This document shows, one piece after another, positions 29,863-61,967 of a DNA stretch of 64,000 nucleotides. The stretch spans positions 124,001-188,000 of the forward strand of contig NIVC01002017.1 in the NCBI GenBank assembly GCA_002269645.1, read 5' to 3'. The stretch comes from Macrostomum lignano. Its lineage: Eukaryota. The notes under the pieces are model-generated. The model ran no database searches and was not told the DNA's origin. It was given only the letters and a program-made list of their open reading frames with translations. The position numbers and the translations under genes were made by a program. Every line of letters begins with the position of its first letter. Position 1 is the stretch's first letter.

Positions 29863-32260
29863 TCACATAGGCAGGTAGACGCTGCGAGACTTGGGAGGCC
29901 TGGCGCAGGCCTGAAACAGATGCCTGCTGCCTTTCCGATGCAGGAAGCCGATAATCATGACGGTCATATTGTCGCAGCCGAGGCCGCTATTGTGACAGTC
30001 GGGAGCCAGGCACTGCATCATCAGGTCTTCGCACACCTGCGGCAAAAAATGCGCAGTTCAGAGGACGAGAGTAACTTCTTTGACAACGACAGGAACGACA
30101 TCCGGCCGGGATCGAACCCCCACTCTAGCCACATCCGGGATCGAATCCTCACTCTTACCACATCCGGGATCGAACCCCCACTCTTACCACATCCGGGATC
30201 GAATCCTCACTCTTACCAAATCCGGGATCGAACCCTCACCCTTACCACATCCGGGATCGAACCCCCACTCTTACCACGTCCGGGTCCATCTCCTGGGCCA
30301 ATCGGACACGAACAAAGTTCACCACCTCCTGATTGGTGAGCACGTCCCAGATGCCGTCACACGCCAGCACGATGAATTCAACATCGGGTGTCACGTCGTT
30401 CACGGTGACGTCAGGCTTCGCTGATGTAGAAGATCAGATGACATATAGATGTAGGGACACTTTCAAACAAAAGATAAATAAGCGACCTCAAAGCGTCAAA
30501 GCCTAACAAAAGGCCTGTAATTATTGTATCAATGAATCCGGGTAATGAGTGTTGCAAATAAACAGTTTCTCAGCACACCTGTTCCACTGATTTCTTGCAG
30601 GCTTTCGTTTCAGTCAGTGATGACAGAGCAGGATCTGTGTCAGATCTTGACTGAGTCCTTTGCACGAGCTAATTAACTGCTTCATTTTCAAATAGACAAA
30701 TCCCACTGACTCACTCTGAGTCCTAAAGTGTCGCAATGTCTAAAAATTTAAAGATTTAAGCCTTCCAGAGTCACAAAGGCACTTTCAAAGTAACAAAACG
30801 TCACTCTTGGTGTCGCTCTTATTTTGTCAAAATGCTCCCCTTTGTTAAAAGAGGAATATCACTCTCCCAGAGCACTCCCATGTCACTCACCTGTAACAAT
30901 CTGCTCCTCTGCGCTCTTCTTAGTGTTCCTTTTAAACACGAAATCGCCCAGCGCTCTGCTCAGCGCCAGATTGCCATTGACCCGGTTGAAGTCAACCCAG
31001 CCACCGGCAGCTTGAATCCGAGCTTTCTCCGTCTCATTGCTCGGCTTGTGATCTCTGCTGAGTTCCACGGCCAACCCGCAGACGCTCATCACGGCTCGGC
31101 TGTCGCCGGCGCTGGCGCACCAGACCCGGCCTTCGCGGAGAATGATGGCCAGCGCTGTGGAGCCCGCCAGCTCGTCTCTGGTCTCCTTGCAGTTCTGCAT
31201 CTCCTCGTCTAGCGCTAGGAAGCCCCGCTCCATTGCGGCACTGGGGTCAGCTGGGAATGACGGCTGCGCCAGGATCTTGCGATGCAGGTTGGCCGCCGCG
31301 TACTTGGCCACCTTGGGGTGTCCGGCGAAACCGGATTAATTTATCTAGAAACTTATCTAGTCTAGCTTTTTCACCAGAAAGCTTAGGCCAGAGATTCTCC
31401 CTCACCCCTAGAATCTCAGCCCAGAGATTCACTCTCTTCCCTTAGAAGCTCAGCCCCAGAGATTCACTCTCCCTCTAGAATCTTAGCCCCAGATATTCAT
31501 TCTCTCGCCTTAGAATCTCAGCCCAGAGATTCACTCTCTTGTCTGAGAATCTCAGCCCAGAGATTCACTCTCTCGCCTTAAAATCTCAGCCCAGAGATTC
31601 ACTCTCTTCCCTTAGAAGCTCAGCCCCAAAGATTCACTCTCGTCTTAGAATCTCAGCCCAAAGGTTCACTCTCTCGTTTTAGAATCTCGGCCCAAAGGTT
31701 CACTCTCCCGCTTTAGAATCTCAGCCCAGAGATTCACTCTCTCCCCTTAGAAGCTCAGCCCCAGAGATTCACTCTCTCGTCTTAGAAGCTAAGCCCAGAG
31801 ATTTACTCTCTCCCCTTAGAAGCTAAGCCCGAGATTTACTCTCTCCCCTTAGAATCTCAGCCCAGAGATTCACTCTCTCGCCTTAGAATCTCAGCCCAGA
31901 GATTCACTCTCTCCGCCAGAATCTCAGGGGCAGAGCAGTTATACCCAATGGAAGCTCCTACAGACGATTTATTGTAATTCATTCTTTTAACCAACTCCTT
32001 AAGCTTCGGAGCCCCATGGAATTGACAGATCAATAAGCAAACTGTCATTTAGACAGTGGGGTCACCTTGGAGCCGCCATGCCCATCAAAAACGGCAAAGT
32101 AAGCGGTGTCTAGGTGACCAGGCAGGCTGAGGAAGCTGGAATGCGCATCTTCCATGTGAACCCGCCAGCCCTGCATGTTGGATGTGCCAACAGTGAGGTC
32201 TGGACTGCGTTTCAATGATGTGTCCTTGTTTGTGACAGGCTCTGATAAGGTTTGGCCCAT
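29863..32260 (-). CDS. Protein phosphatase 2C (PPM family), 311 aa, 4 exons
   Basis: Exons 32260-32066, 31311-30891, 30420-30275 and 30036-29863 total 936 nt. MGQTLSEP N-terminus (myristoylation-like Gly2). Motifs MQGWRVHMEDAH, FDGHGG, GSTA, AGDSRAV, LALSRALGD, LACDGIWDV and GCDNMT. Confidence 0.95.
30105..30285 (-). repeat. 29-bp tandem repeat (6 units) spanning the PP2C exon 3 / intron 3 junction
   Basis: Sense unit GTAAGAGTGGGGGTTCGATCCCGGATGTG; copies at 29-bp spacing (30270, 30241, 30212, 30183, 30154, 30125). Confidence 0.93.
31385..31928. repeat. 32-34-bp minisatellite in PP2C intron 1 (~16 units)
   Basis: Unit CCCAGAGATTCACTCTCTCGCCTTAGAATCTCAG. Confidence 0.95.
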
Positions 32261-37937: not shown

Positions 37938-39475
37938 GTAGTTATACTACAGTTTGTCCTTGATATTCACAAACATTGCAATAGATGTACGTACATATGT
38001 GTACATGACATACATGTATATGCTGCGCAGCACACAATTGCATTATATATGCTTTAGAAAGAAGAAGACATGCAGAGCATCAAATTAAAAAAAGCACACG
38101 ACGGACGTATTTGTTGGTGCATCAAGCGATGAAAATGTGATAATATATTTCTTCCAGCTGTCTTCTGCTTTACTTTGGTCGAATTTTTAGTGGTACATGA
38201 TTGTTAGTTGAACAGAAATAAAAAATGGAGATATAGCTAGAAATTGAAATTAAGCTTCACTGCCAAACATTTTGATCTACACATTCGAAAAATACATGTA
38301 AAACTGCAATCTATTATTAGCTATAGTTGGGGTTGGTTTATCATAGAATTTTTATTGTAGAGATTGGCTTCTGTGCTTTTTGTGCTAATAGAAATTCTAT
38401 AAAATTCTTTTTCAGTCCATAAAAATAAACTGTACGAGTATTAAAAACTATAAAAATGAAATGGGACGGCGCGAATTACTAAAACATATCCGGAAAGTTT
38501 ATGGGACAAAATTGGCGGCAAACAGCTATAGTTTGTTTGATAAGAACATCAAGACGTACATATATATATTGAAGTTGACAATGGCTTTGATTTTTTGAAA
38601 GATCGTAAAAGTGTCCGACTACAGGAATTTCACGTCGAGAAACTGTGAAGTTGTTAAGTGTAGTTCCTACTGCAGCATGGCCTTCTAATTTGTTTTGCTT
38701 TTTTCGGGTTTGATCAGGGGGTTCTTTGGCTTATTATGACGGAAAAAAGAGTGAACTGGCAAAGCAGCTATTCAAATAAATCTACTTAAAATATCTACCT
38801 TACTGTATCTGCCGTAGGAATAGCATAATAAAAAAGCTGAAAAACTAAAAAAGAAAAGCGGAGAAATTGGCGCATCCGACAATGACAGTTATAGTCGTGC
38901 GCAGGTGACAGAAAAGACGCACTTAACGAAGTTGCACTACTGCCTAGCTAAAGAAAAACACCTCCGTTCGGTTTTCAATGATGCAAGAGGAGCAAAAATA
39001 AAGACAAGAAAAAAGCTAATATAAAGGCCACAAAAAAGGAGAACTAAATTTTAGCAAAATATAAAAAAGACGAGAAAATTGAAACAAACTTTAAGTTGCT
39101 TTGATAAAAGGCACGAGTTCAGTAGCATTTGAATAATTTTACTAATTATTGTGTGATTCAATATCAGATAGTTCGCAGACTCAGTCGAGTGAGCTAATAG
39201 CAGTTGGAGTTGAGACATTTCTATTAATTTCTGAGTTTCTGAGTTTTTTCTATTGTTTTTGCTGATGAACTTATTACATGTATGTTTCCATACGAACCTA
39301 AGTACTCCTCCTATAAGATTTGCTAAAAGCTTTAATTAATAAATTCAGTCCCTGTTTAAAGCTGCCTCGCTACTTCTGATGAGAGACAGATAACCCATGG
39401 AACAAGCAGCAAACTGAATCTAAGATTATTTTTTCCGATGTCATGGACGGATCTTTAAACTGAGATGGTCAATTG

Positions 39476-42400
39476 TCACTGCCTGGCCTTCGCCGCGTCA
39501 GCCAGAAAGTCCAAAACAGAGCCTTGGCCGGATGCTTCGGCGTAGTCGTGACAGTTCTTGCCCTCTTCGGAGGCTTCCTCAAGTGCTCCGGGATCGGAGT
39601 CGGCGATCGCGCGCAGAACTTCCACGTGACCGTTCGCGGCAGCGTAGTGAACAGGCGCCCGGCCGCTGGCGTCGCGGGCCCGGGCGCTGAGGCTGCCAGC
39701 CAGCAGGAGCCGGACCGCCGTCGGATGGCCGCATGCAGCGGCGAAGTGCAGCGGCGACTTACCACTGGGCGTCAGTCGAGTCAGCAGCGGCTCGGAATTT
39801 TCAGTTTCGTCGTCATCTGCTTCCTCGTCGGCGCTGGTCAGGAGATAATCCAGTACGTCGAAGTGACCGTGCTTGGCGGCCGCGTGAGCCACGGTAGCGC
39901 CCTCTTCGTCCACTGAATTTATCGGTACGCCTAAAAACGTTAAAAAGTCGACAACGTCTGCTGAGCAGGCGTAGTGCAGAGCTGTCTGGCCTCGCTTATC
40001 AGTCGCTGCCAGGACCTCCTCAAGGCCTTCGCGTGCCAAGTATACAAGCATGTCCTGGCAGTTTTTCCAAGCTGCCACATGAGCAACGTTAGCGCCCTGA
40101 GAGTCGATAGCGTTGGGCGGCAGGCCTAGGTGCAGTAGAAAATCCAGAGCCACGTCGCTTCTTGCGTAGTGCAGCAGGCCTCGTCCGTTGGAGTCAACAG
40201 CTTCCAGGAGCCCTCCGGTGGCAGCAACGGCTCCAGCCGCTGATCCATTGTTCTCATCAAGCGTCAATAGGCAACGTAGTACTTCCAGGTTGTCGCCGAG
40301 TACAGCGGTGTGGGCCGGCGTGACACCTTGATCGTCGGGCTCGTCGACAGGCAAACCACTCAGCGCAAGAAGCTGAACCACCTCGGCACTCCTGGTAAAG
40401 TGCATAGCGGAGCGTCCAGCAACGTTCTTCGATTTCAGAAGCTGCTCGGCGCAGGGCAAACTGCGAATATGGCCCAGAACCTCGGCGTTATCGTTCATCG
40501 CGGCCACGTGCGCGACTGTAGCCCCATTAGAATCGCGAGACATTGGGTCCAGTCCTTTCTCTACCAGCAAGTCCAAGACCTCTGGAGAACCGGCATGGTG
40601 CATCAGGCTCTGGCCTTCTTTATCAATGGCGGAAAGCAGCACCTGACCAGACGGCAGGCCAAGAAGGTACTTCACAACCTCGGCGTGGCCATTAAGTGCA
40701 GCCGAGTGTGCCGGTGTGGCGCCTTCGTCATCGCGAGCGTCAGGATTGAGGCCTGCCTCGGTGACTAGTAGTTCAGCAGCTGCCGCCGTGCTAGCGTAGT
40801 GCAGGAGGCTCAAACCTTTGGCATCAACTGCCTTGGCTGCGTCTTTGCCACCTTCTTGTGATAGTAGATAGCGCAATGCCTCCAAGCGACCGTTGAGTGC
40901 TGCCAGGTGTCCAGGTGTACACCCTCGGCGGTTGCGCGTGTCCAGACGGACTCCGTTCTCATTCAGGTACTTCAGGGCGTCCAGCTTGTCTTCAACGACG
41001 GCAATATGCGCCGCCGAGTTCCAATTGCTGGTGCGGCCGCATAGCTTGTTACCGGCCTTGTGATACTCGGTGAGCTGTGTCAGATCCCCGTCCACCAGAA
41101 TTTCGATCAGTCGGCCGGGCAGGCGGCTTTCGTGGATGCTGGTCTCAACGCCATTAGCGGCGAGAAACTCGGCTACTTCCTGTGACTCTGTATAGTGCAT
41201 CGGTGTCTGATTTTCAACGTCCCTGCGTTTAAGCAGATCGGGATCCACGGTCAGCAGAAACTGGAGTATCGGCAGGCAGCCGGCCCTGGCAGCCAGGTGT
41301 GCTGGCGTCGCACCCTGACTGTTTGCCGCTTTGGCATCGATTCCGACGCTGTGCAAAAATTTGAATGCGTCGCCATGACCCTTGATGGCGGCGATGTGAC
41401 AGAGGTTGAAACCGCGCACTCCGTCTTCAGCGTAGAGGCCCAACAGTTTCTCACCAGACTCGTAGAGGCGCTTTATTTCAGCCTCGTCGCCAGATAAAAC
41501 GGCATCAATAGCGGCTTCTGACAGTCTGCTTTCCTCGACGCTAGTCTTGACGTCAGATTCAATTAGAAAGTTTGCCACTTCGGCGCTGCTGGCGTAATGC
41601 ATCAGCGAGTCGCCCTGAAAGTCTCGCGCCAGAAGCAGACTGCCGTCTTCATCAAGGCTGCGCAAAAACTTAAGCACTTCCAAGCTTCCAGTTAGAGCTG
41701 CCAAGTGTGCTGGAGTTCTGCCGCGATAATCTCTTAAACTGAGCAGCGTCTTGCTCGGGTCTCTGGCCAGCAAGTACTCTAGCAAGTTCACATGGCCATA
41801 GAGTGCTGCAAAGTGGGCCACTGTGTTGCCAGCGAGGTCAGTTGAAGCCAAGCTGAAGCCGACATCTTCAAAAAAATGGACCATCCGAATGCTGCCGCAT
41901 CCGGCGGCAACATGCAGTGCATTGCCTCCGTAGCAGCCTTCGTAGCAGCGACCGCGTACTTTCTTTCCGGCGCGCACGTACCTGTGCAGCCTGTCTATGC
42001 TGCCGGAGCAGATGATGTCGATGAGCTCACTCGGTAAACGACTTTCGTCGGCTCGGATTGGCAAACCATTCTGGTGCAGAAAGTCGACAACCTCAGTATC
42101 TTCAGCGTAGTGCATTAGCGTGTTTCCGGTTGAATCCAACTCTCTCAGAAGCTGTCCACTGGGGTCCTGTTCAATTAAAAAGGCTAGCAGATCGAGACGA
42201 CCATTCTTGGCCGCATAGTGTCCAGGAGTCGCTCCGTTAGCGTCCTTCGCGGAAAGGCTTAGTCCGCAGTCAAGCAAAAACTTAGCGATCTGTGTACTGC
42301 TCGCATAGTGCAATAAGCTCTGTTCCATTTTATCCGTCGCCGTGATGGCCTTTCCGTCCGTGTCAAGTTCCTTAATTAGCTGCAAGACTTCAAAGGCGCC

Positions 42401-45400
42401 GTTCAGTGCTGCTATGTGTCCCGGAGTCTCTCCTCTATTGTCAGTGGCCAGAAGGACAGTCTCTGGTTTGTTAAAATCACACAAAAGGCGCAGGACAGGC
42501 GCTAGGTTGTATTGAGCAGCCCAGTGTCCAGGCGTGGCCCCATTGTCGTCCACCGCAAGAGTTGACAAGCCCTTCTCGTTCAGGTAGCGCACCAGCTCAG
42601 TGGTGCTTGCGTAGTGCATCAGTGTCTGATTGCTGCCGTCGCGAACTTGTACTAAATTGCCAGACGGATCCTCGCTTTCAAGGTACTGTAGAATGTCCAA
42701 ACGACCGTAGCGTGCGGCAAAATGCGCAGGCGCTGTGCCTGATGCGTTTTTCTTGTCAACTGGCAGGCCAACTTCAGAGCGCAGGAATTTTACTGCTTCG
42801 AGGTTGCCACCCTGCACAGCACAGTGCATACAGCTGCTGCCGCCCTCCGTTTCGGCTTGCAGGGCCTCCAGCCCAGAGAGTTCTAGGATGAAGCGCAACA
42901 CGTCCAGTTGCCCCTTAAGAGCCGCCAGGTGAACTGGCCTGACATTGTCAGCTTTGTTTATAGCCGTCACATCCAACCCATGCGCATGCAGAAAACGAAT
43001 CATATCCGATCGACCTTCCATTGCAGCTATGTGGACGGCCGTGTCACCGAACGCATCGATTGTCCTTCCGATGATCTTTCCACCGGCTTCGTAATAGGCT
43101 TCAAGAGCGGACAGGTCGCCAGATCTGATAATGCTTACCAGTTGGGCGGGCAAACGACTCTCACTTTTTGGAGTCTTGGAGCCGCAGCGCTCAATAAATG
43201 TTGTGATCTCGGCACTCTCGGCAAGGTGCATCGGCGTTCGACCCTCTATGTCAGTCGCTTCAAGCAGTTCACCTTTCTTGTCATGCGCTATTAAAAACCG
43301 CAGTATCTCCAAATCATTAGCCCAAACTGCTAGATGCGCAGGAGTGTTGCCTTCATAGTCTCTGAAGGCAATGTCGATGCCGTTTTCCGCCAGAAAACGC
43401 AACACCGGCAAGTGGCCGGCCACAGTAGCCACGTGAGCGGCATTTCCTCCGTAGCGGTCAGCGGTTCGACCCAGCAGCTTATAGCCGCATGCATGAAACT
43501 CTTGCAGACTCTGCAGGTCGCCCGACATGCAGATATTAAATAGATCATAAGATAACCTGCTCTCTTCAGGTTTCGTGTCCAAACCGGCTTCCTGGAATAT
43601 TTCAACCACTTCCGCACTCTCAGCGTAGTGCATCGGCGTTCGACCAGTGGAGTCAACAGAGAAAAGCAGCCGCCGTAGCTCAGGATGGTCCCGCAGGCAT
43701 TGCAAAACGTCGCTACATCCGTTTAGGCTGGCTGCGTGTCCAACGGTTCCTCCATTGTCGTCCGCCGCAAAAGGATCCAAGCCACCGTCGACTAGTAGGA
43801 ACTGCAGCACCTCTGGACTGGATGCATAGTGCAGCAGTCCGGCTCCGTAGAAATCCAGTTCGTGCAGTAGATCAGCATCAGTTTCACGCACAAAACGCAG
43901 TACGCCTAGGCTGCCACTTCTGGCGGCAAGATGTCCGGGTGTGCAGCCATCAAAATTTCTCAGCTCCAAACAGCGCGGCTCGACTGAGTGAATCACGGCC
44001 AGCAAATCTGCGCGGTCTTCCACGGCGGCAACATGCGCAGCGGTGTTCCAGAAATGGTCGTTCGTTCGCCCGCGGAGCTTACCACCAGACTCCAGAAAGT
44101 CGCGTAGCCGCTGCACACTTCCAGACTGCAGGATTCGAATCAGCTGGCTTGAAAGACGGCTCTCGTCAATGCTAGTTTGGACTCCGCAGCTAGTCAGGAA
44201 TTCGACCACTGGTCCACTATCAGTGTAGTGTATCAGCGACCTCTCATCAGCGTCTAACAACTGCAAAACTGTCTTGGATTCATCAAGTTCGTGCAAGTGC
44301 TTCAATATATCCAGATGACCGTTCATAGCAGCTAGGTGCCCCATGGTGCGCCCATTAGAGTCTGTGTGGCGCAAGAAGTCTCCAGACTCCTCGGCTTGCC
44401 AAAGTGACTGAATCAGTTTCAAGGCTTCTAAATGTCCGTTGCGGGCAGCTAAATGCGCAGGTGTGGCTCCATCGGCATCCAGTAGGTCCAGTCGAACACC
44501 GTTGTCGTTCAAGAACTGAAGTATTTCAATCGAACCAACAGCAGCAGCAAAATGTCCTGAGGAAAATCCATCCACGTCTTCTCCTCTGTAGACTCCCTGT
44601 AGCTTTCCACCAGCTTCGGCAAAAGCTTTCAGAGCGTCGAGGTCCTGCGACATCACTGCATCGATAACATCTTGATGAAGACGACTGGCATTTACGTTGG
44701 CCGTAACTCCATGCTCTTTAAGGAATGCGACGATTTCAGCACTGTCGGTGCAATGCATGAGCGTCCTGCCAGAATCGTCAACTACTTGAAGACACGACTG
44801 ATTGCCTAGCTCAGTCAAGAGGTATTCAAGAACCTGCAGCTGACCTGTCAGCGCTGCGAGATGAGCCGGTGTTTGACCGGACGCGTCTTTAGCTTCGAAA
44901 ACTTGGGCATCGGGGCTTTGCTCTCTGATGTACCTCAGAATGTGCACGTGGCCGCTTCGAGCCGCCAGGTGAGCGGGCGTGATTCCTTCTCGATTTTTAG
45001 CCACTAGACTAACTCCAAGCCCGTGAAGAAATTTCAGCAACTCCAGGTGACCCAGCATCGACACAAAATGGCTAACTGTGATGCCTTTAAGTCGTTTTCC
45101 GGCTCGCTGGTACTGCTTCAGGAACTCCAGTTCGCCTGACATCAGAATGTTTATTAGATCCTTTGGAATTCGGCTTTCTTCGTGTTCGGAGGTCACGCCG
45201 TGACCTTCCAGAAAATCACAGACGTCCGCACTGTCTGTACACTGCAGCAGCGAACGTCCGGTGTCATCGAGCGACTTGAGCAGCTCGCCGGACGGATCCC
45301 GGCTAGCGATGAACTGCAGCGCGCCAAGGTGACCGTTGAGGGCCGCGAGGTGTCCCGGAGTTTGGCCGTGGATATTGCGGACTCGAAGCGGCCTGCACGG

Positions 45401-48400
45401 ATCGTTCTCATCCTGACAAGCGTTGCAAAGAAATTCCAAAAGCTCAGTGTGGCCTTTCATTGCCGCGAAGTGGGCGGCCGTATCACCATTGCTGTCCTCA
45501 GAGTCAAGCGAAAGTCCCTGCTGATGCAGGAACTCAACTAAGGCGACATTTCCCTTCAGAGCGGCCACGTGAACAGCCGTGCCGCGATGCTCGTCATTAG
45601 TGCGGCCTGGCGAAAGGTTAGCATGGAGCTTAATTAATATTGGGTTTTTTAGTACAGTGTATGTATTTGCGTCTGTTAATGTTTCCTGGCGTCTGTATTA
45701 GTCTACGCTTATATCTATCGATAATTTTCTGTCAAAGGGGACTTCACACAAAATGAGTGGCTACAAAGTGCTTCAATATGTACATATGACCTTTCATGGC
45801 GGCTAGGTGGCCCATAGTGCGCCATATTTTCATAAGATGCCAATGCTCAAAGGAGGTTTTAAAATTCAAAATCTCAAGGGGCTTGTGTGAAAATGCAACC
45901 TAGTATCTCTATAGCTCGTATCCTCAGAATTACCTGCAGTGCACTCGTACAGAACGCTTCATTAGCAATAGTATGGTTGACCCAAAGTTCAAAGTAATGG
46001 TTAGATGGCTATGTAAAAGTCTTAATGGTGTGAATTTAAGTCTTAAAGTCTTCTATTATTGTTTGGTTAACACTGACTTTGATCCCACCATACGAGTGTG
46101 TGAGTGAGTAAAGTGAGTCCCTATATGCTTTCATGCATTCATACCTGAAACTTGCTTTTAGTTTCTTACTGCGATAAGGACGACTAAATGAGATGATGGC
46201 GATCTGCAGAATTAGTCAAAGAGCACTTGACAACTATTGGGTTTCATTGGATCCCGGATTCATTTTCTGGGTCTGTTGGATTCCTTGAAAACAGGTGATC
46301 CGTAGTGTCCTACGACGGTTACGAGCTCTACTTTGCTCTTATTTTGATGGCACACCAGAGAAAATTCAGATGGCAATTTTAGCGTTTAAACAGATTTGAC
46401 AGATAAGCACTTATCGACACCACAGCTACAATTCCAGAAATATTAAAGCCATAAACTCACCCTGGAGTTTGCCGCCGTCCGTAGCGAACTTCTTTACTGC
46501 GTCCAAATCACCCGACATAATCGTGTAGAAAAGCTGCTGAGACAAGATGCTCTCTGCCGGGCTGGTCTTCACTCCCTTCTCAGCCAGGAAGCGAGCAATC
46601 TCGCCGGATTCAGCAAAGTGCATTAGCGTCTTTCCGTCGTTGTCGATGGCTAGAAACAGTTCCCCGCTCGGGTCCTGCTGATCTATAAACTTCATAACCT
46701 CGATGTGGCCATTTAGAGTGGCAAAATGGGCCGGTGTTCGACCTTTGGCATCCGGCTGGCCGAGGACTGTCGCACCATTCTTCTCGACGAGGTACTCAAG
46801 CACTGAAAGACGGCCGTTCCTCGCGGCCAGATGCACCGGCGCTGTACCGTCTTCGTTAGTTGCGGTCAAACCGACACTCTGGCTGTGAAGGAAGTCGACG
46901 ATCTCGCGGCTACCGACCCCTGCAGCGAAGTGCGCGGCCGTGAAGCCGTGTACGCTGTCGTCCGAGTAGATGCCGACGAGTTTTCCGCCTCCCGCAGCGA
47001 ACTGACGCAGTTGGTCCAGTTCGCAGGCCATTAGCATGTCAACTACCTGCAGGGTTATCAAAACTGTGAAAATCTAGCCTTTGATCAACAAAATTTCAAC
47101 GTCACTAATTATTACCTGATCAGCCAGACGACTTTCCTCCAGCGGAGTGGGGCAGCCAGCTTCAGTCAGCAAACGGCAGGCTTCAGTGCTGTCCGCATAC
47201 TGCAGCGGCGTCTTTCCAAAGTGATCCGCTTCGAGGGAAAGCTCCGGCCGGCGCTCCAGTAACATTCGTAGAGCATCGAGGCTTCCATGCAGAGAAGCCA
47301 GGTGAGCTGGCGACCTGCCCTGGTAGTCCTTCACAGATAATAGTTCCGGGTTGCGCTCGTGCAGGTAAGCCAGCACTTCGGCGCTGCCGTTTTGTGCGGC
47401 CAGGTGAGCTGCAGTCCGACCGCTGCTGTCGGTGGCATCGAGAGCCAGGCCGCATTCGTCAAGATATTTCAGAACGCTGCACGAACCCATGGCCGAAGCA
47501 AAGTGAACCGCCGTGAGCTGCTGCATGTCGTCATCACTATAGCAGCCGCGCACTTTGTTCCCAGCATCGTGGTAAGCCTTTATGGCATCCGCGTCGCCCG
47601 CTTTAATCAGGCTTATAAGCTCCGAGGACAGGCGGCTCTCGTCAACGCTTACCGGTAGACCGCGCTGAGTGAGCAGCTCGGCTACAGCCTGGCTCTCCGT
47701 GTAGTGCATAAGAGACTTCTCTTCATCGTCCAGGGCGGTCAGCGTCTCTCCAGTCGGGTCGGTATCTAGCAGAAGTTCCAAGGCTTCAACGGATCCGCCC
47801 TGCGCGGCGAAATGAGCCGGCGTTCGACCGAGGTAGTCCCGCGCTGTCAGTAGCGACGGGTCGACCTCTTGAAGATACTTCAGGACGTCAGTCTGGCCCG
47901 CCATTGCGGCCGCGTGAGCCGGCGTGTCGCCCTCGTTGTCCTCCGGCGCCACTGGCAAGCCAGCCGTCTCGTGCAGAAAGCGAAGAATTTTAACCTGACC
48001 TACATCGGCGGCAATGTGCATGACTGTCTCGCTACTGCGCGTCCGGCCGCGCACCTTCTTGCCAGCCTGATGAAACTGATGCACCGCCTCCAAGTCCCCA
48101 GATCGGACCTGGGCCAGAAGCTCGCGCGACAGCCGGCTCTCGTCGGCGTCAGCGTTAAGACCGAGGTCTCGAAGATAGTCGACGACTTCCTGAGTCTCGG
48201 CGCAGTGAACTAGCGAGTTGCCCTCGCGGTCAACGGCAAGCAGAACCTCGCCGGTCTTGTCCACCTCGCGGAGGTACTCGAGCACATCGAGCCGAGAATT
48301 GGCCGCGGCCAGGTGCGCCGGAGTCTTGCCATCCCGATTCTCCGCGTAGATGCTCAGCCCGTGCTCGTGCAGAAACCGGAGCATGTCCAGCTTGCCCGAC

Positions 48401-48627
48401 ACGGCCGCTAGGTGGACGGCCGTGTCTCTGAATGGGTTCGGCGCCCGGCCCTCCAGAGATTTCCCGCTCTCTTTGTAGAGCTTCAGCTGCTCTAGATCGC
48501 CCGATTCAAGAATATCGAACAGCTCGGTTGTCATCATCGCCTCCGAGGCTTCGTCGGCAGGCAGCTCGATAATCTCCTCCTCTTCATCGTCTACTTGCTG
48601 CTGCGGTGGCTTTATTTCGTCAGCCAT
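39476..48627 (-). CDS. Giant ankyrin-repeat protein, ~2742 aa, 3 coding exons
   Basis: Exons 48627-47116, 47046-46461 and 45606-39476 total 8229 nt, in frame with GT-AG introns. Continuous G.TP.H.AA..G...L..L ankyrin repeats; no other domain recognised. Confidence 0.93.
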
Positions 48628-51209
48628 TCCTGAAAATAATATTTATGTGAAATTAGTGACACCATTTATTGCGGTAAAGTTGCGCGTCAGGTAAATAGTA
48701 AATTTAAAATCTTAGAGATTTAAGTGTATTGTGAAGAATGTGAGCACTATCATAGCACACTAAGAATACTCTAACTTAGAATCTAAGGAGGGCACTAGCA
48801 CCATGATTGGCAAGTTTCTTACGTATTTAGGATTGGTTTTTGAGATTTTATATGCAGGGCCTCAAGCAGTTTTAGTCTGTACTCATTTGAGCACTTATGA
48901 ATGGTAGAAAAAAATAATCGATTTAGCTGTCACAGCATTCTTTCTTTGCATACCACATCAGATGGTCGTGCACGGCTGACATACTTTACCTGTATTCTCT
49001 ACTTCTCACATACAGGTGTCGGGTAGTTTCACCTATGCAGGTGATACTCTGGTCACCAGAGCATTGAAATCGGTAAATGACCTCTTTATCTTTATCTTAT
49101 CTTATTTTATCTTTCCATCTTTGTATGAACAATCTAAATAAGGTATTGTGGCTCTACTTGGTGCAAAAATATACGCTATTACTTCACTACAGTCTTCCAA
49201 TTTCCAATTTCAATGCAAAACAAGTCATTCAGAGTTTAGTGGCTGAAATATAATCAGGTAGCTTATTTACCACTGAATTCACTTCCCGAAATCGTAGCTC
49301 GCCTCGGCAAGTTGTCTGTCTAGCTGTCCCAATGTCTTGGGATGCCAAATAGTATTTTAGATTTTTCAGTCCTGATAGACAGAGAGGTGCAGTTAGGAAG
49401 AGGCCGGAGGGCCTGGCTGCTATGGTATTTGTCGTTAACCCTGGCTGGCATAAAAGAACCCTGTGGAGTGAGGTGGTTTTGGGCATGGGCTGGACTGGGG
49501 AGAGAAGGCCTCATTGAGTCCCTGACCCACCTCTACAGTCATGCACTGTTCTAAACTTCCCTATGCCTCTGCCTACTCAGAGCTTAGCAAACCAGGTGGG
49601 GTAAAGCATTGTTGGAGTGGCAGCTGGAGATGAAGATAGGAGGAACAGGGGGTGTCTGTCTGGGGTAGAGATGACTGTCGGGAGAGCAGGCCAGAGCAGG
49701 CTTTGCAGTACATTTGCTCTGGGGTGGTCCACCGGCCTCTCTGTGACGTGCAGAATTCTCTATACCACTGGGAAAGAGCAGGAGTTCTGCCTTGTAATTC
49801 CATTCCATACCTGGCGCACTGCAAATTAGAAGGTGGAAGGGGGGAATAATGAGGGGAGAAGCGGGCGGAGATGGAAAGGAATGACTCGCCGAAGTGTAGA
49901 CTCACACGCCTGGTCTGATGATTCAAAGAATTTTCTGCCCAGATCTTGAAGTGCAACTGAGCACTGGTCTGGCAGATTAGTTCTCTCCCTTGCTCTTACA
50001 GTCCAATGGCGCCTATTCCACTTCCTCCTTTCTCTCCTTTGTGAGTACTTCGGATCTAAGGTGGTGGTGGAGAACATAAGGCTGGGAAATCAATATTACA
50101 GGCCTACCTTTAGCGGAGTATGACTGAAGGCAGGCTAGCTCTTGCTTTCTTCATTTGGTTTCCTAGTTCCTACAAAGTGCCTCATTAAAGTATCTGTCGA
50201 ACTTTTACGCAAGTAACGCTGAACGCAGATCGGTGTATCAAAAAATCATAATCAATTTCAAGGACTTTTTAATACCTGATTAAGACTCCTTGCTCAAAGT
50301 CATTCTTGCTCACGAATTTCAATCCATACTCGTAACTTCATTTTTAAAGCCAATAATTTGTAAATCAGACAAAGCTATACTATTATCAATAAGTGAGTTG
50401 GAGTGTAATCTTCTGGGCGAGATGATCTCGACTATTTTAAGTAGAAGTGCCGCTTCGTTATCGCAACATTCATCCGTTCCTTTCTTTCACAGAAAGTTTA
50501 AAAAGATTTTTTCAACCAATACTTTCATAAAAGATCATAGAGTAGAGAGGTATTGAGTGAGCATATATTTTGTTGTGTAATATTGCTTCAAAAAAACATA
50601 TTTTCTGGGGCGGAGCAAATATGTTATGCTAAAGTAGCTGCTCTTCTGCTCTACTGGCACTTAATACTGTCTTGTTGACTTTGACTTATTTAAAGACATT
50701 TTTCTAAGAAGGAACAAATACCTCTGCAAACTTTCTCGAACGTACTGGCACCGTTCCCCTTCATTGTACACCCTAGCCGGCGTCCTAGACAGTACTCGGA
50801 CTGACTCAGCGTTACGACAACGGGGTGAAGGAAACCCCCAAACCGACTCACTTGTAAACCAATGGGCGCTGCAGGGGACGGAAAGTGCAGAGAGAGAGAG
50901 ACATTGAGACAGAGGGGGGGGACGAACAAGAGAGAACTGCTATTGACAGGAAAACTGGATTCTACTGGCTGGACTTACTGGCTTAAAATGGAAGCACAGC
51001 GAAAGAAAACAATGAAGGTAAGGAGCAATTCCAGCCGCTCCAATTGAGCTCCATTGAGTAGTCATGATGATAAGTCTCAACTGCAACACACGCCAATCTA
51101 TTTGGGCTTCATGCATCGGTAAGTTTCAATTTTCCACACTGTACATGTACAAGTGCAGCACTACAAATTCAATGCACTATAAAACACTGAGCCCATGCCG
51201 TCAATACAG

Positions 51210-58120: not shown

Positions 58121-60240
58121 ACAGCTCAAGCCGGTGGAACTCGATGACACAATTGAATTTTTAATCTCATGCCTGCTTCTTTGTTGAACATTGAAATCGA
58201 TTCTTTAACTCGAGCCTGATTTCACCAACCTGCTAAGTACTCGTAGTTCTGCAAGTACGCTTCCTTAAAGCGATGCTCATTGGTATTTTATTTTTCTATT
58301 TGTGATTCCATTCAAATCATTTTTGCGCCTGTGAAATATGAAGGTATTTTTGGCTCTTTTTTAATATTATATCTTATTTATTCCTGAATTGAAGATTTGA
58401 GTATATTTTCTGCAAATACTACTAAATATAACTACTATTTTAAAGATATTCACATTTTTGCACATGATTTGCAAAAATTCGTTACTAGCATACCGTTTCG
58501 ACACATCGATAATGTACAACTTCGAGTGTAATGCAGGCAGGAATGACTTACAGTAAGTTTATCTTTTCTGCCTTCTCTTTAAGTAGTTCTTGTTTAGAGC
58601 AGGAATGCAGCCAGTGCCTTCAATGCATGCGTGAAGGCGCTCAACTTCTACTCCAGATTCGACATTCCAAATACAATATTGGCTGCGCTGCATCTTCTTT
58701 ATCGCCAAGAGAAAAACAGTTCGTTTCATTGTGTGTGATTACTCGTAATTTACATCGCTGAGACCACTTCAAGCCAAAGCCAAACCTGGATGCAGAATTC
58801 TCGGCTGAGAGTGCAAGCTGCGAAAACTCAAACTGCTTTCACGTTTGCTTTTATAGTAAACAAGTAGTAAGTATAGCAATCTGCTTATTAACTAGTCATA
58901 TTGGTAATCTCTTCAGGAGACGATGTTCAAAGCAAGAAGCATCCGCCCTGGAAGCCTCGCCTTAGATATTACTTAGTTCCCCTTAGGAGTTTCGGATAAA
59001 AGCATCTGAGCAACCCCCATGAGCATTTCAGCGATATCCTCAGTACCTTGACATTAACAATTCACTCTGAGCCACAGAATTTCAGCGACTCCCCATGAAT
59101 TTTTTTTGTTGACACGGCAATTCTTTTACAAGCAACTCTGGTCGGTTGGTAGAAGAGAAATGAAAAGAAGAAAGAAATGAAGAGAATGGAAGCCAAGTTA
59201 TTCGTGTTTAGAATAACTCGATGCATATTTTCGCGACTTGAGTGACTCTAATATGAAATTTCGTATAATATAATAGCGAACAGTTATATTATAGGAAGGT
59301 GAAGGAGGGTGGAACAGGCCCCTGTGACAAGCCGAAAGTATTTTGTGCCTAACAGGTTTGGTGACTAAAATGTGTCCATTACTCTGCCGTGGCTTGCCAT
59401 TGTATAGCAATTTGACGATCATTATCTGTAGTTTTTATGCGTTACAATTCATTGTTTGTTTGCCATTCGGCTAGAGAGAAGGGTATGAATACACTCTACC
59501 ATAGACATCAAAGTTTTCTTCAAGTTTTCTTCACACCCCCCTGCTACGAGCGTCTCACTTTTCTATGCCACAGACAGTTCATACGATTTGATCGTCCAAT
59601 AGCGATACAATGAAAAGAAACAGCGGCCCCAGTGCGTGACAACGATTGTTATTGTCATGTACGTGGCGCGGGGTAATGGACAATAGCACGCATCCCGCGT
59701 GCGTGCTATCCACGAGTTTCCCGTTGGCAGAACTGCTGCCGCAGCTCATATATACTTGCCCCCCGTAGCTGGGGAGTGAATTTTGTGTCTATGGCTTGCA
59801 CGATCGCATCTAAGCAGCCCCGTTCTCTCCCGTAACGGCAGTTGAGCTGCCACAGTAGTATTTCGAAATTATTTAAATTTAGACATAGCTAAAAGTGTCT
59901 ATCACTATGCAGATAGTCGCTTGTTTGTGTTATGCTTGCATGTATTAACATTTTAATGTAGTTAAATGTTCATTTGTTTACACGTCAGAGTTATAAATCA
60001 ATTGTATTGCGATTAAGACTCACAAATCCGACAAAATTACCAACAGTGATTGAACTGTCATCTGAGGAAGAGCAGTTTGCATGCAGAAATTTATTGGGTA
60101 CACGCAATGAAAAACAGCATTGGCTCATAGAAATTCAAACTAACAGTACATGTAGGTACACGCATTGAAAAACAGCATTGGCTCATAGAAATTAAAAAAC
60201 AATACGAGCGTAAGTGCACACGTTATGAGAGTCAAATAGA

Positions 60241-61967
60241 TTACTGGTGACCCTGGTGCCACACCCGAAAGCACGGCTCTATGCAGATTCCCGGTTGTCC
60301 GACGCAATTGCCGCAGATAAAAACTGTTCGCTTCTGTAGTCCAGCGTTGCTGCAGACACGGCATCGCTTTGTCGGATGTCTCTGTGTGGCAGTTGGCGGT
60401 AGTCGCATTGTCGAGTGCTGCACAGCTGCTGCATTTTGGTCTGGGTTCTGCAGTGGCATTTGCTGCGGTTGCCTTGCAGCTCACAAACGACCAACGCCGG
60501 TGTCGCAGATCGGAACACGCAGGCAGGCTTCCAAGTGTTGCAGAAACGATCGGGATCCGCCAATGTGTCTGTAGGCAATCCACGAATTTCGAACGAGTTG
60601 CATTAGAAGATACGACGCCAGCTTGACGAACCATTTGTGCGTTTTCTGCACGGATTGTACGGTTCACTACCAGCATCCATCCGGTCGACTCCACCCATGT
60701 TTCGGTTGTAATCGACAGCCTCTGTGGCTTCATTATCTGCTGCTCCAGGCCACCTCGCAAAATTCTGGTTACCTGCACGCAGTTGGCAGAGCCAGCACTG
60801 TCCAGCATAAACACAGTCTTTAGTCCGGAAGTTCGCCTCTCCACAATCTTTACGGCCAACAAATCACCACGTCTAGAAAAAGCGCTTGACGGTGGATTCA
60901 AAGCCTTCTGCCGCAGAGCTGCAGGCACGCCACGCTGCTGCCGTACCGTGCCAGTCAGCAGGGTTCCTCGTTGCAGCAGCCATTCAGCAAGTCGTGCGGA
61001 AGAAAACCAAGTGTCGCAAAAAATTCTGTAGCCGAGGTCCAGGATGTCACGTGACAGTTCAACAACGATACGTTCGGAGAGCGACAACTGCGGTGCATCT
61101 TGCCCGAATAAGTTGTTGTGGGCCACCGTTGAATGAACAAGAAAGTTCCATAAGTAGCCGCTGCTTGATTCCGCCAGACAGTATAACTTGATGCCAAGTT
61201 TTGCGTTCTTGTTCGGCATGTACTGGCGAAAATGAAGCCTGCCTTTGAAAAGTATCAATGACTCGTCGATCGAAATGTTCTGCTGTGGCATATATTTGTT
61301 CTGGCACCAACTTCACAAATGGTCGAATCTTGCACAAAGGGTCAGCCTCGTCAACCTCGGTACAGTTGTAGCAACGAAACCAAGTCAATAAAAGTTGGAA
61401 TCTGTTTCGCGAAAGGCAGGGCTGCGCATGATAACAATCCTGGCGATAAACAGGATCCATTGACCAGTATTGGCTGATATCAGGCTTTTGCACCAGACCC
61501 ATGTGTAGCAGGATGCCAATAAACTTTTTCATCTTGTTCATATTGCATGGTTTCCAGCTACGCAGTTTCCATGGCAACTCTCCGCCACCCTGCTGAACCT
61601 GCTGAATCTCCATAGCTGCTCTGCTATTTGTCCAGTCGCACAAGGACTGTACGAAGCTGTCAGGAAGGAACTGTCCAATGATAGCCGAGATTCCATTCTC
61701 GATGTCCCTTGGCACTATGAAGTTTGGATGTAAGCCAGATGTTCCGAAAAATTCGGGAACTGGGTTTGGCCGAATATCAGTTTCCGTGCTTGTATCATGC
61801 CAGTTTTCGTCAGCTTCTGCTTGCTGAGCTTCGGCAGGACCTTCTTCAGGACCGCTGGCCTCGCTATCGTTTGATTCATCATCATTTTCAAGTGCGGTCG
61901 CAAATGAGTCATCATCTGAATCACTGTCCAAGATGAAGTTCTGTAGATCTGAGCCGGCGGCTAGCAT
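60241..61967 (-). mobile_element. piggyBac-like (PGBD4/DDE_Tnp_1_7-type) transposase, several frameshifts
   Basis: Acidic N-terminus; FIGILLHMGLVQKPDISQYWS; LSRNRF; catalytic SIDES (~61266), CDTWFSS (~61014) and MGGVDRMD (~60685); C-terminal Cys-rich domain KRCRVC...CGNC...CIEPCFRVWH. TTAA/TIR ends not identified. Confidence 0.88.

What the first reader, a model, noticed from the sequence alone, without database searches (positions are those of the whole stretch)
39476..48627. ~2740-aa all-ankyrin protein built from a 12-fold higher-order module
A spacer motif ESRL(S/P)xxLxxxxxSGDLxxLxxxxxxGxKLxGRT recurs 12 times, plus a partial N-terminal copy. Each is followed by 2-3 canonical ankyrin repeats and a shortened repeat (GxSLMHYxxSxEVxxFLxxxG). 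The C-terminal ~500 aa alternate full and short repeats without the spacer. The modules are highly diverged, so the architecture is old. There is no TM, signal, kinase, death or SOCS domain. It may form a segmented solenoid scaffold or spring. A 6.1-kb exon and only two coding introns contrast with neighbouring genes, raising retroposition or horizontal origin as possibilities.
Basis: partly seen in the sequence, partly recalled or inferred. Interest (0 to 1): 0.7.

Follow-up and report, generated by a model that had tools for sequence, protein, structure and literature searches.

The report
Giant modular all-ankyrin flatworm protein
This is a real, selectively maintained gene of the flatworm Macrostomum lignano encoding a 2742-residue protein made only of about 80 ankyrin repeats in 13 five-repeat clusters; the reported "spacer" is a degenerate cap-type ankyrin repeat, so it is an unusual but recognisable ankyrin scaffold.

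Summary
A minus-strand gene (48627..39476) has three coding exons and two GT-AG introns. It encodes 2742 aa with 12 ESRL...SGDL...G.KL.GRT elements plus an N-terminal partial copy.

My spliced model is identical to the public Macrostomum lignano record PAA61585.1 / A0A267EJ80, an uncharacterised "hypothetical protein".

A second genomic copy (homeolog) has the same CDS length and the same introns, and its reading frame is intact. dN/dS is 0.145, so the gene is functional.

The "spacer" is not a non-ankyrin linker. AlphaFold2 folds it as a helix-turn-helix. Pfam two-repeat ankyrin models start inside it. It aligns to the N-cap of designed ankyrin proteins. The "short repeat" is an ankyrin repeat lacking three residues at the inter-helix turn.

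Each module is therefore an ankyrin repeat cluster: a cap-like repeat, 2-3 canonical repeats, then a short repeat. This is formally like a tankyrase ARC. The modules are predicted to stack into one continuous, irregular solenoid.

The cap signature is nevertheless distinctive. An exhaustive HMM search of 1.84 billion proteins found it only in M. lignano.

Nothing supports horizontal transfer or retroposition. Function is inferred: an acidic, cytoplasmic, multivalent scaffold.

The parts
47116..48627 (-). Coding exon 1 (ATG at 48627; aa 1-504). It holds the acidic N-terminus, the partial cap repeat, modules 0-2 and the start of module 3.
   Evidence: ORF and splice sites read from the sequence. 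The product is identical to PAA61585.1.
47047..47115 (-). Intron 1: 69 bp, GT..AG, phase 0. It lies inside the cap repeat of module 3 (ESRLADQ|VV).
   Evidence: The same 69-bp intron is present in homeolog L001.
46461..47046 (-). Coding exon 2 (586 nt; aa 505 to the first base of codon 700).
45607..46460 (-). Intron 2: 854 bp, GT..AG, phase 1. It lies inside the cap repeat of module 4 (GGKLQG|RT).
   Evidence: The homeolog has an intron at the same position, 889 bp long.
39476..45606 (-). Coding exon 3 (6131 nt including the TGA stop at 39476-39478; aa 700-2742).
48430..48531 (-). Partial N-terminal cap-type repeat (aa 33-66, TTELFDILESGDLEQLKLYKESGKSLEGRAPN). It lacks ESRL.
   Evidence: It scores 22.1 bits on junction-HMM columns 29-64. 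The best Pfam Ank_2 stretch, aa 42-121, covers it.
48040..48141 (-). Cap-type (N) repeat of module 1 (aa 163-196).
47539..47640 (-). Cap-type repeat of module 2 (aa 330-363).
46966..47136 (-). Cap-type repeat of module 3 (aa 498-531; interrupted by intron 1).
   Evidence: As a held-out copy it scores 61.9 bits.
45599..46554 (-). Cap-type repeat of module 4 (aa 669-702; interrupted by intron 2).
   Evidence: As a held-out copy it scores 77.7 bits.
45077..45178 (-). Cap-type repeat of module 5 (aa 843-876).
44588..44689 (-). Cap-type repeat of module 6 (aa 1006-1039; ASRL variant).
44063..44164 (-). Cap-type repeat of module 7 (aa 1181-1214).
43463..43564 (-). Cap-type repeat of module 8 (aa 1381-1414).
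   Evidence: Pfam Ank_4 scores 30.0 bits starting at spacer residue 8.
43061..43162 (-). Cap-type repeat of module 9 (aa 1515-1548). Module 9 is the long one, 372 aa.
   Evidence: Pfam Ank_4 scores 43.2 bits starting at spacer residue 12.
41945..42046 (-). Cap-type repeat of module 10 (aa 1887-1920).
   Evidence: AlphaFold2 predicts helices at residues 6-14 and 17-25.
41432..41533 (-). Cap-type repeat of module 11 (aa 2058-2091).
   Evidence: AlphaFold2 predicts helices at model residues 177-185 and 188-196.
41030..41131 (-). Cap-type repeat of module 12 (aa 2192-2225), the last one.
39479..41026 (-). C-terminal spacer-free array (aa 2227-2742). It mostly alternates 36-aa full and 30-aa short ankyrin repeats and includes an acidic insert at about aa 2624-2640.
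   Evidence: Repeat map.
48628..48637 (-). Polypyrimidine tract plus AG (ttattttcag) ending 2 nt upstream of the ATG. It is a candidate acceptor for a 5'-UTR intron or a spliced-leader trans-splice.
   Evidence: Sequence. 38.8% of M. lignano genes are trans-spliced (PMC5730564). This is an inference only.
39331..39336 (-). ATTAAA, a candidate poly(A) signal about 140 nt after the stop codon.
   Evidence: pattern match only.

Best explanation
This is a genuine nuclear gene of Macrostomum lignano. It is already deposited, uncharacterised, as BOX15_Mlig019663g2. The product is an acidic, soluble, all-ankyrin protein of about 80 repeats. It was built by serial tandem duplication, inside one exon, of a roughly 5-repeat ankyrin cluster.

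Each cluster has three parts:
1. Its ESRL and G-R-T segments are predicted to pair as the repeat's hairpin.
2. Two or three canonical repeats, the later ones with a 3-residue longer 'DPSGxLL' loop.
3. A repeat shortened by 3 residues at the inter-helix turn.

The cap repeats stack in line, so the 13 clusters are predicted to form one long, irregular solenoid rather than beads on a string.

The most likely role is a cytoplasmic, multivalent protein-protein interaction scaffold with 13 reiterated, similar grooves.

Shown: gene structure, identity, purifying selection, the ankyrin nature of both odd repeats, and restriction of the signature to M. lignano in the databases searched.
Predicted: continuous stacking.
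Inferred: the scaffold function.
For: Identity and gene model:
- My spliced model equals PAA61585.1 exactly.

Selection:
- Homeolog locus L001 (NIVC01001489.1) is collinear at 95.5% DNA identity, with 64 gap openings over 10.9 kb.
- All three of its exons have lengths identical to the window's, its introns are at the same sites and its ORF is intact.
- dS is 0.057, dN is 0.0082 and dN/dS is 0.145.

The spacer is an ankyrin repeat:
- AlphaFold2 gives two 9-residue helices per spacer at pLDDT about 90.
- Pfam Ank_4/Ank_2 matches begin at spacer residues 8-13 in 6 of 10 spacer+next-repeat fragments. Two are above the gathering threshold.
- Junction-HMM columns 32-58 align to the N-cap of designed consensus ankyrin proteins.
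- DARPin and tankyrase alignments start at module residues 4-8.
- In other proteins, ordinary ankyrin repeats align to the spacer columns.

The short repeat is an ankyrin repeat minus 3 residues:
- It aligns to internal and C-cap repeats with a 3-residue gap.

Continuity of the solenoid:
- pTM is 0.68 for 2 modules and 0.78 for 3 modules.
- Foldseek TM (query-normalised) is 0.52-0.61 to continuous solenoids: ankyrin-1, NOMPC, TRPA1 and a 12-repeat DARPin.
- It is 0.29-0.39 to DARPin-DARPin fusions and tankyrase ARC1-3.

Other properties:
- Only ankyrin Pfam families are found.
- There is no hydrophobic segment and the net charge is about -164.
Against: - There is no direct evidence of function, partners, tissue or localisation. 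The gene ID was not found in the main text or held supplements of the M. lignano papers searched.
- Continuity of the solenoid rests on AlphaFold2 models built from shallow alignments of 6-8 internal paralogous rows.
- pLDDT dips to 70-76 at the short-repeat/cap junctions.
- TM scores of about 0.55 show that the geometry differs from canonical solenoids.
- By Foldseek E-value, the top hits include DARPin-DARPin fusions and tankyrase ARC1-3, so a more segmented arrangement is not excluded.
- Model coordinates could not be inspected.
Confidence: 0.75

Rival explanations
1. Beads-on-a-string reader. Each roughly 170-aa module would be an autonomous, capped ankyrin repeat cluster, functionally like a tankyrase ARC, that binds one short linear motif. 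The protein would then be a 13-valent clustering or recruitment platform with hinges at the junctions.
For: - The module anatomy (non-canonical first and last repeats around about three central repeats) matches the AR1-AR5 layout of a tankyrase ARC (PMC6439159).
- Foldseek E-value ranking puts DARPin-DARPin fusions and tankyrase ARC1-3 near the top.
- pLDDT dips at the junctions.
- Several groove-side positions of the third repeat ('AALNG', R/Q before TP) recur across modules.
Against: - There is no linker: the short repeat runs straight into the cap repeat.
- pTM is 0.78 over three modules.
- TM scores favour continuous solenoids, 0.52-0.61 against 0.29-0.39.
- Identity to tankyrase is only 22% and no tankyrase-specific domains are present.
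- Most conserved columns are framework positions.
Confidence: 0.2
2. Mechanical element. A continuous superhelix of about 80 repeats would act as a long elastic ankyrin spring or tether, for example in muscle, cilia or adhesive structures. This would be analogous to the 29-repeat NOMPC helix but free-standing.
For: - Continuous stacking is predicted, with TM 0.55 to the NOMPC ankyrin helix and 0.52 to TRPA1.
- The repeat number is very large.
- The ankyrin-spring concept rests on established knowledge of NOMPC and ankyrin-R.
Against: - There is no anchoring domain at either end: no channel, membrane, cytoskeleton-binding or coiled-coil domain.
- The irregular repeat lengths (28-47 aa) would break a uniform spring.
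- No expression data are available.
Confidence: 0.12
3. Foreign or retroposed origin. The gene would have entered the flatworm genome by horizontal transfer (bacterial, viral or symbiont ankyrin gene) or as a processed retrocopy, which would explain its intron poverty.
For: - There are only 2 coding introns in 8.2 kb, against an M. lignano average of 4.9 introns per 3-kb transcript (PMC5730564).
- Many ankyrin-rich proteins occur in bacteria such as Wolbachia.
Against: - Both introns are canonical and conserved between the homeologs.
- The gene sits next to the same ADAM gene in both copies.
- GC3 is within the host range.
- No bacterial or viral protein carries the junction signature among 1.84 billion representatives.
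- The best outside hits are generic, at 22-29% identity, and taxonomically scattered.
- No poly(A) remnant or intron-containing parent gene was seen.
- Intra-exon tandem duplication explains the long exon.
Confidence: 0.04
4. Non-functional repeat expansion or annotation artefact, such as a decaying pseudogene or chimeric model.
For: - One UniProt model (A0A1I8J392) leaves the frame after aa 2320.
- The window is repeat- and transposon-rich.
Against: - Both genomic copies have an uninterrupted 8229-nt frame and no CDS indels, despite 64 gap openings in the surrounding alignment. dN/dS is 0.145.
- The M. lignano transcriptome assembly and gene boundaries are built from RNA-seq evidence (PMC5730564).
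Confidence: 0.02

Closest known systems
Tankyrase ankyrin repeat clusters (ARC1-5 of TNKS/TNKS2)
   Same: - In both, an ankyrin array is subdivided into reiterated clusters of about 5 repeats and 160-170 aa.
- In both, the first and last repeats of a cluster are non-canonical and about three central repeats are canonical (PMC6439159).
- Both are multivalent by design.
- Tankyrase ARC1-3 and ARC2-3 structures are among the significant Foldseek and phmmer hits, and the alignment starts inside the spacer.
   Different: - The flatworm protein has no SAM or PARP domain.
- It has 13 clusters against 5.
- Identity is only about 22% and TM is 0.30-0.39.
- Its clusters are predicted to stack continuously rather than at broken angles.
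- Its cap signature (ESRL...SGDL...G.KL.GRT) and its 3-residue-deleted last repeat are its own.
- Binding of a tankyrase-type peptide was not tested.
Long continuous ankyrin solenoids: the ankyrin-R/B/G membrane-binding domain (24 repeats) and the NOMPC/TRPA1 N-terminal ankyrin helices
   Same: - These give the best global superpositions of the predicted 2- and 3-module models, with query-normalised TM 0.52-0.61.
- All are extended multi-site binding or elastic solenoids.
   Different: - The flatworm protein has about 3 times more repeats.
- It has no ZU5/UPA/death domain and no channel domain.
- Its repeat length is irregular (28-47 aa) with a 5-repeat super-period.
- There is no orthology: identity is 18-22%.
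Designed consensus ankyrin proteins / DARPins with N- and C-capping repeats
   Same: - The spacer aligns to the designed N-cap.
- The short repeat aligns to internal and C-cap repeats.
- DARPin alignments cover the module from residues 4-8.
   Different: - In the flatworm protein the 'caps' are internal. They occur 12 times inside one chain and are predicted to be stacked against the preceding module rather than solvent-exposed ends.
Other natural ankyrin proteins with alternating full/short repeats or internal cap-like repeats (Parasteatoda spider proteins, Wolbachia and metagenomic giants, P0079-P0082, P0080, P0125, P0177)
   Same: - They share the 30-aa short-repeat type and the full/short alternation.
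- Some have 'short repeat, linker, cap-like L..L..A...GD...V..LL..GA' junctions.
   Different: - None carries the ESRL/GRT signature.
- Their best spacer-spanning match is 19.5 bits or less, against 62-102 bits for the flatworm copies.
- These are likely convergent uses of the same ankyrin design space.

Membership tests
Ankyrin-repeat superfamily | Tandem helix-turn-helix repeats of about 33 aa that match the Pfam Ank models. | tested here: met
   Ank_2 scores E = 1e-246 with 37 stretches. Ank_4, Ank_5, Ank_3 and Ank are all far above gathering scores.
Ankyrin-repeat superfamily | The repeats stack into an L-shaped solenoid. | tested here: met
   This is met by prediction only. The AlphaFold2 models have pLDDT about 90, and all top Foldseek matches in the PDB are ankyrin solenoids.
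Ankyrin-repeat superfamily (applied to the 'spacer' itself) | The spacer is itself an ankyrin-type repeat. | tested here: met
   It folds as two 9-residue helices. Pfam Ank_4/Ank_2 start inside it in 6 of 10 fragments. It aligns to the designed N-cap. On its own, however, the 38-aa spacer gets no Pfam hit, and hhalign against the protein's own canonical repeats is in register but not significant (P = 0.078).
Tankyrase (TNKS) family | A C-terminal SAM domain and a PARP catalytic domain. | tested here: not met
   There is no SAM or PARP hit in the whole-protein Pfam scan.
Tankyrase ARC-type cluster | A 5-repeat cluster with non-canonical first and last repeats. | tested here: met
   The modules read N-F-(F/L)-L-s. 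The ARC layout is taken from PMC6439159. This is a resemblance in architecture, not evidence of homology.
Tankyrase ARC-type cluster | A conserved pocket that binds the tankyrase-binding motif (RxxxxG peptide). | not testable with these tools
   Only 22% identity and TM 0.30-0.39 to ARC structures. Pocket residues were not mapped.
Canonical ankyrins (ANK1/2/3) | ZU5-UPA spectrin-binding supermodule and a death domain after 24 repeats. | tested here: not met
   No such Pfam hits.
TRPA/TRPN (NOMPC) channels | A six-TM ion-channel domain C-terminal to the ankyrin helix. | tested here: not met
   No ion-transport Pfam hit. The maximum 19-aa hydropathy is 1.38.
ASB / other ankyrin+X adaptor families (SOCS box, kinase, death, SAM, BTB, FYVE) | A second, effector domain. 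| tested here: not met
   Only ankyrin families reach significance.
PP6 regulatory ankyrin subunits (ANKRD28/44/52) or any other characterised all-ankyrin protein | Ortholog-level sequence similarity. | tested here: inconclusive
   The best outside hits are 22-29% identical, generic and lack the spacer. The word-index database appears not to return proteins longer than about 1220 aa. No reciprocal-best-hit test was possible.

The most novel reading that the evidence does not exclude
The 5-repeat module is a previously undescribed, lineage-specific kind of ankyrin repeat cluster. Its conserved ESRL/GRT cap would lock 13 clusters into the longest continuous ankyrin superhelix known in an animal: about 80 repeats, or two to three superhelical turns. 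The protein would work either as a 13-valent reader of one short motif or as a free-standing nanospring. It would then be a natural counterpart of engineered rigid DARPin fusions.
Probability: 0.2. Interest if true: 0.55.

Novelty: new variant of a known kind. Interest (0 to 1): 0.3.

Why it matters
If the predicted architecture holds, this protein is a natural experiment in building very long repeat-protein solenoids from capped sub-units. That is of interest to repeat-protein engineers working on DARPin fusions and ankyrin springs, and to people studying how super-repeats evolve by intra-exon duplication.

For flatworm biology it is an apparently lineage-restricted gene under purifying selection, in a model organism with working RNAi and transgenesis, so its role is directly testable.

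It does not bear on a long-standing open question. The fold, the repeat types and the cluster principle are all known.

Tried and rejected
1. Exact look-up of the spliced protein and of the two long ORFs in the contig index. The organism was found instead through the cluster of the top HMM hit.

2. Word-index homolog search with aa 1-700. It returned only generic ankyrin proteins at 22-29% identity, and none has the spacer motif. With the junction alignment there were 101 candidates and none was significant. This index seems to miss proteins longer than about 1.2 kb, because it did not return the gene's own cluster. It is therefore a weak negative.

3. hhalign of the spacer against the protein's own canonical repeats. 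The alignment is in register but P = 0.078, which is not decisive alone.

4. Metagenome locus scan with the junction alignment.

5. Paralogs elsewhere in the window: none.

6. Expression or annotation in the literature. 'Mlig019663' is absent from all full texts searched and from the held supplements of four M. lignano papers. The search 'Macrostomum lignano + ankyrin' gave nothing relevant.

7. Horizontal transfer, retroposition and pseudogene readings were rejected.

8. P0112 looked at first like a 48%-identical paralog. It is a fragmentary M. lignano model, apparently derived from the same gene: its junction segment reproduces the window sequence apart from small deletions.
Full report
**Observation.**
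The region holds one minus-strand gene. ORF listing and translation, together with the splice junctions read from the DNA, give the following model:
- Exon 1: 48627..47116.
- Intron 1: 69 bp, GT-AG.
- Exon 2: 47046..46461.
- Intron 2: 854 bp, GT-AG.
- Exon 3: 45606..39476.

The CDS is 8229 nt, which gives 2742 aa.

The motif ESRL(S/P)..L.....SGDL..L......G.KL.GRT starts at aa 163, 330, 498, 669, 843, 1006, 1181, 1381, 1515, 1887, 2058 and 2192. A partial copy lacking ESRL lies at about aa 33.

This is far beyond chance:
- A strict pattern gives 11 hits, against none in 20,000 shuffles of the protein.
- A junction HMM built from ten copies scores the two copies left out of training at 61.9 and 77.7 bits.

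Modules are only 37-43% identical to one another.

**Identity of the gene.**
An exhaustive hmmsearch with the 66-column junction profile (short repeat plus spacer, alignment A2) was run against 1,835,955,588 representative proteins.
- One outstanding hit was found: P0076, 1191.7 bits, 17 stretches.
- The next hit scored 142 bits.

P0076 and its cluster mates are all from Macrostomum lignano. One member, P0227 (PAA61585.1 / UniProt A0A267EJ80, 'hypothetical protein BOX15_Mlig019663g2', 2742 aa), is identical to my spliced model. This independently confirms both introns.

The window is therefore M. lignano genomic DNA, and the protein is already in public databases but uncharacterised. The M. 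lignano transcriptome assembly and gene boundaries are built from RNA-seq evidence (PMC5730564), which argues that the gene is expressed. I found no paper or held supplement that mentions the gene.

**It is a functional gene.**
The second genomic copy (homeolog locus L001, NIVC01001489.1) is collinear with the window at about 95.5% identity, including the divergently oriented ADAM-type neighbour.
- The 10.9-kb alignment over the gene has 64 gap openings.
- Even so, all three exons have exactly the same length in both copies.
- The introns sit at the same positions (69 and 889 bp).
- The frame is open throughout.
- Nei-Gojobori estimates are dS = 0.057, dN = 0.0082 and dN/dS = 0.145.

Both copies have therefore been under purifying selection since the duplication. 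A pseudogene or an artefact is excluded.

**What the 'spacer' is.**
The spacer is an ankyrin repeat of the N-terminal-cap type: a helix-turn-helix without the TPLH tetrapeptide. Five lines of evidence support this.
- (a) AlphaFold2 predicts two 9-residue helices for every spacer modelled. The models cover aa 1887-2232 (pLDDT 89.9) and aa 30-504 (pLDDT 90.2).
- (b) Spacer-plus-next-repeat fragments were scanned against Pfam. In 6 of 10 fragments the two-repeat models Ank_4 and Ank_2 begin at spacer residues 8-13 and profile positions 1-6. Two of these matches are above the gathering score, at 30.0 and 43.2 bits against 22.7. For the N-terminal copy, the best Ank_2 stretch (aa 42-121) includes it.
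- (c) Against PDB sequences, HMM columns 32-58 align to the N-cap of designed consensus ankyrin proteins. Several DARPin alignments and the tankyrase-1 alignment of a whole module begin at module residues 4-8.
- (d) In unrelated proteins from the big search, ordinary ankyrin repeats align to the spacer columns in register.
- (e) hhalign of the spacers against the protein's own canonical repeats gives the same register, but it is not significant alone (P = 0.078).

On its own the 38-aa spacer gets no Pfam hit, so it is a strongly diverged repeat.

In both models DSSP marks the R of ESRL and residues of the G-R-T/C segment as beta-bridge partners. I infer that these two conserved motifs together form the repeat's hairpin equivalent, which would explain why both are conserved. 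This is an inference from predicted structure.

**What the 'short repeat' is.**
The short repeat aligns to internal repeats and to the C-cap of designed ankyrin proteins with a single 3-residue gap at the turn between the helices, where canonical repeats have 'xGH'.

The same 30-aa repeat type, and the full/short alternation, occur in unrelated ankyrin proteins of a spider, a sponge, Wolbachia and metagenomes. These features are therefore not unique.

**Architecture.**
Anchoring on the TPLH histidines and the cap motifs gives 13 cap-type (N), 46 full-length (23 of 33-35 aa = F; 23 of 36 aa or more = L) and 20 short (s) repeats. There is also one terminal short-like unit, for about 80 repeats in all. 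The arrangement is:

NFLs | NFFLs | NFFFs | NFFLs | NFLLs | NFLLs | NFLLs | NFFsLs | NFLs | NFFFLsLLsLs | NFLLs | NFFs | NFLsLsLsLsFsLFL

Module-specific conserved features beyond the ankyrin framework are:
- ESRL, SGDL and AG.KL.GRT in N.
- TPAH (A in place of L), AALNG and the DP.G.LL loop in the repeat before s.
- LMHYA.S.EV..FL in s.

The protein is acidic, with a net charge of about -164. It has no hydrophobic segment and no Pfam family other than ankyrin.

**Shape.**
The two-module model has pTM 0.68 and the three-module model has pTM 0.78, which indicates a defined inter-module geometry.

Foldseek TM scores, normalised to the query:

| Target class | TM |
|---|---|
| Continuous solenoids: ankyrin-1 (0.58-0.61), NOMPC (0.55), a 12-repeat DARPin (0.53-0.55), TRPA1 (0.52) | 0.52-0.61 |
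| DARPin-DARPin rigid fusions and tankyrase ARC1-3 | 0.29-0.39 |

I conclude that the caps are predicted to stack in line, giving one continuous but irregular solenoid. Confidence dips at the junctions (pLDDT 70-76).

This rests on predictions from shallow alignments of internal paralogs, and I could not inspect the coordinates.

**Taxonomic range.**
Among the 150 best representatives, no protein outside M. lignano has a spacer-spanning match above 19.5 bits, whereas the gene's own copies score 62-102 bits. The only other hit, P0112, is a fragmentary M. lignano model, apparently derived from the same gene.

The cap signature therefore has a distinct HMM and appears lineage-restricted.

Caveats:
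- Only the top 150 of 1766 hits are visible.
- Other macrostomid proteomes may be absent from the library.

**Origin.**
Horizontal transfer and retroposition are not supported:
- The introns are canonical and conserved.
- Flanks are syntenic with host genes in both copies.
- GC3 is 0.57-0.68, against 0.50-0.82 for neighbouring host exons.
- No donor-like relative exists.

Intron poverty is real: 2 introns in 8.2 kb, against an average of 4.9 introns per gene with an average transcript length of 3 kb. It is expected, however, if a 5-repeat unit was duplicated repeatedly within one exon. The two introns lie at non-equivalent positions of two adjacent cap repeats, so they were not copied along with the unit.

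**Mechanism and comparison.**
Formally each module is an ankyrin repeat cluster like a tankyrase ARC: five repeats, with the first and last non-canonical (PMC6439159). The protein is not a tankyrase, because it has no SAM or PARP domain. It is also not an ankyrin, a TRP channel or an ASB protein.

My best reading, at confidence 0.75 for the anatomy and lower for the role, is a cytoplasmic multivalent scaffold. Its 13 reiterated grooves are held in a fixed superhelical arrangement by the stacked caps.

Rivals:
- Hinged, independent ARC-like readers (0.2).
- A free-standing ankyrin spring (0.12).

These two differ from the best reading only in mechanics and remain open.

**Verdict.**
- The finding is an uncharacterised, apparently Macrostomum-restricted variant of a known protein kind.
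- It is moderately interesting for repeat-protein architecture but not surprising in principle.
- Interest is 0.3.

Noticed in passing
window 9167-11587 (-), with adjacent ORFs 8487-9182 and 11640-13301: A non-LTR (LINE-type) retrotransposon ORF with an apurinic-type endonuclease and a reverse transcriptase (Pfam Exo_endo_phos_2 and RVT_1). The region is GC-rich at about 0.59.
   Followed up: partly
window 60143-62099 (-): A piggyBac-type transposase (DDE_Tnp_1_7) split over two overlapping ORFs in different frames. It is a frameshifted, probably dead, copy.
   Followed up: partly
window 30886-31311 (-): An exon encoding the core of a PP2C protein phosphatase (Pfam PP2C, E = 8e-37).
   Followed up: partly
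window 22163-22597 and 26358-26831 (+): Two nearly identical ORFs about 4.2 kb apart, indicating a local tandem duplication. By eye they resemble the C-terminal half of a sigma-class glutathione S-transferase. A possible N-terminal exon lies at about 21.5-21.7 kb. Pfam gave no hit at E <= 0.001.
   Followed up: partly
window ~13.5-17.2 kb, 17.7-18.6 kb, 20.3-20.8 kb, 29.5-30.4 kb and 52.0-53.5 kb: Long mini- and microsatellite arrays, whose ORF translations are strictly periodic (for example MLARLAIHSIPSSV repeated dozens of times). This is typical repeat-rich M. lignano sequence.
   Followed up: no
window ~50.6-56 kb (+); homeolog L001 1-3401: An ADAM-type metalloprotease gene (Reprolysin, Disintegrin and ADAM_CR in the homeolog's annotation). 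It lies head-to-head with the ankyrin gene in both genomic copies, separated by about 2-2.6 kb of shared upstream region.
   Followed up: partly
window ~41.6 kb (codon 2320 of the gene): UniProt entry A0A1I8J392 (2343 aa) is the same gene, but it leaves the reading frame after residue 2320 and ends 23 residues later. The window and the homeolog are both in frame there, so that entry reflects an older assembly or model error rather than a real truncation.
   Followed up: yes
window 48628-48637 (-): A polypyrimidine-AG acceptor ends 2 nt before the start codon. It suggests a 5'-UTR intron or spliced-leader trans-splicing, which affects 38.8% of M. lignano genes.
   Followed up: no
proteins P0125 (3338 aa) and P0080 (2036 aa) from metagenome assemblies: These unrelated giant ankyrin proteins also show reiterated 'short repeat, linker, cap-like repeat' junctions. 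This suggests that capped-cluster super-repeats have arisen more than once.
   Followed up: no
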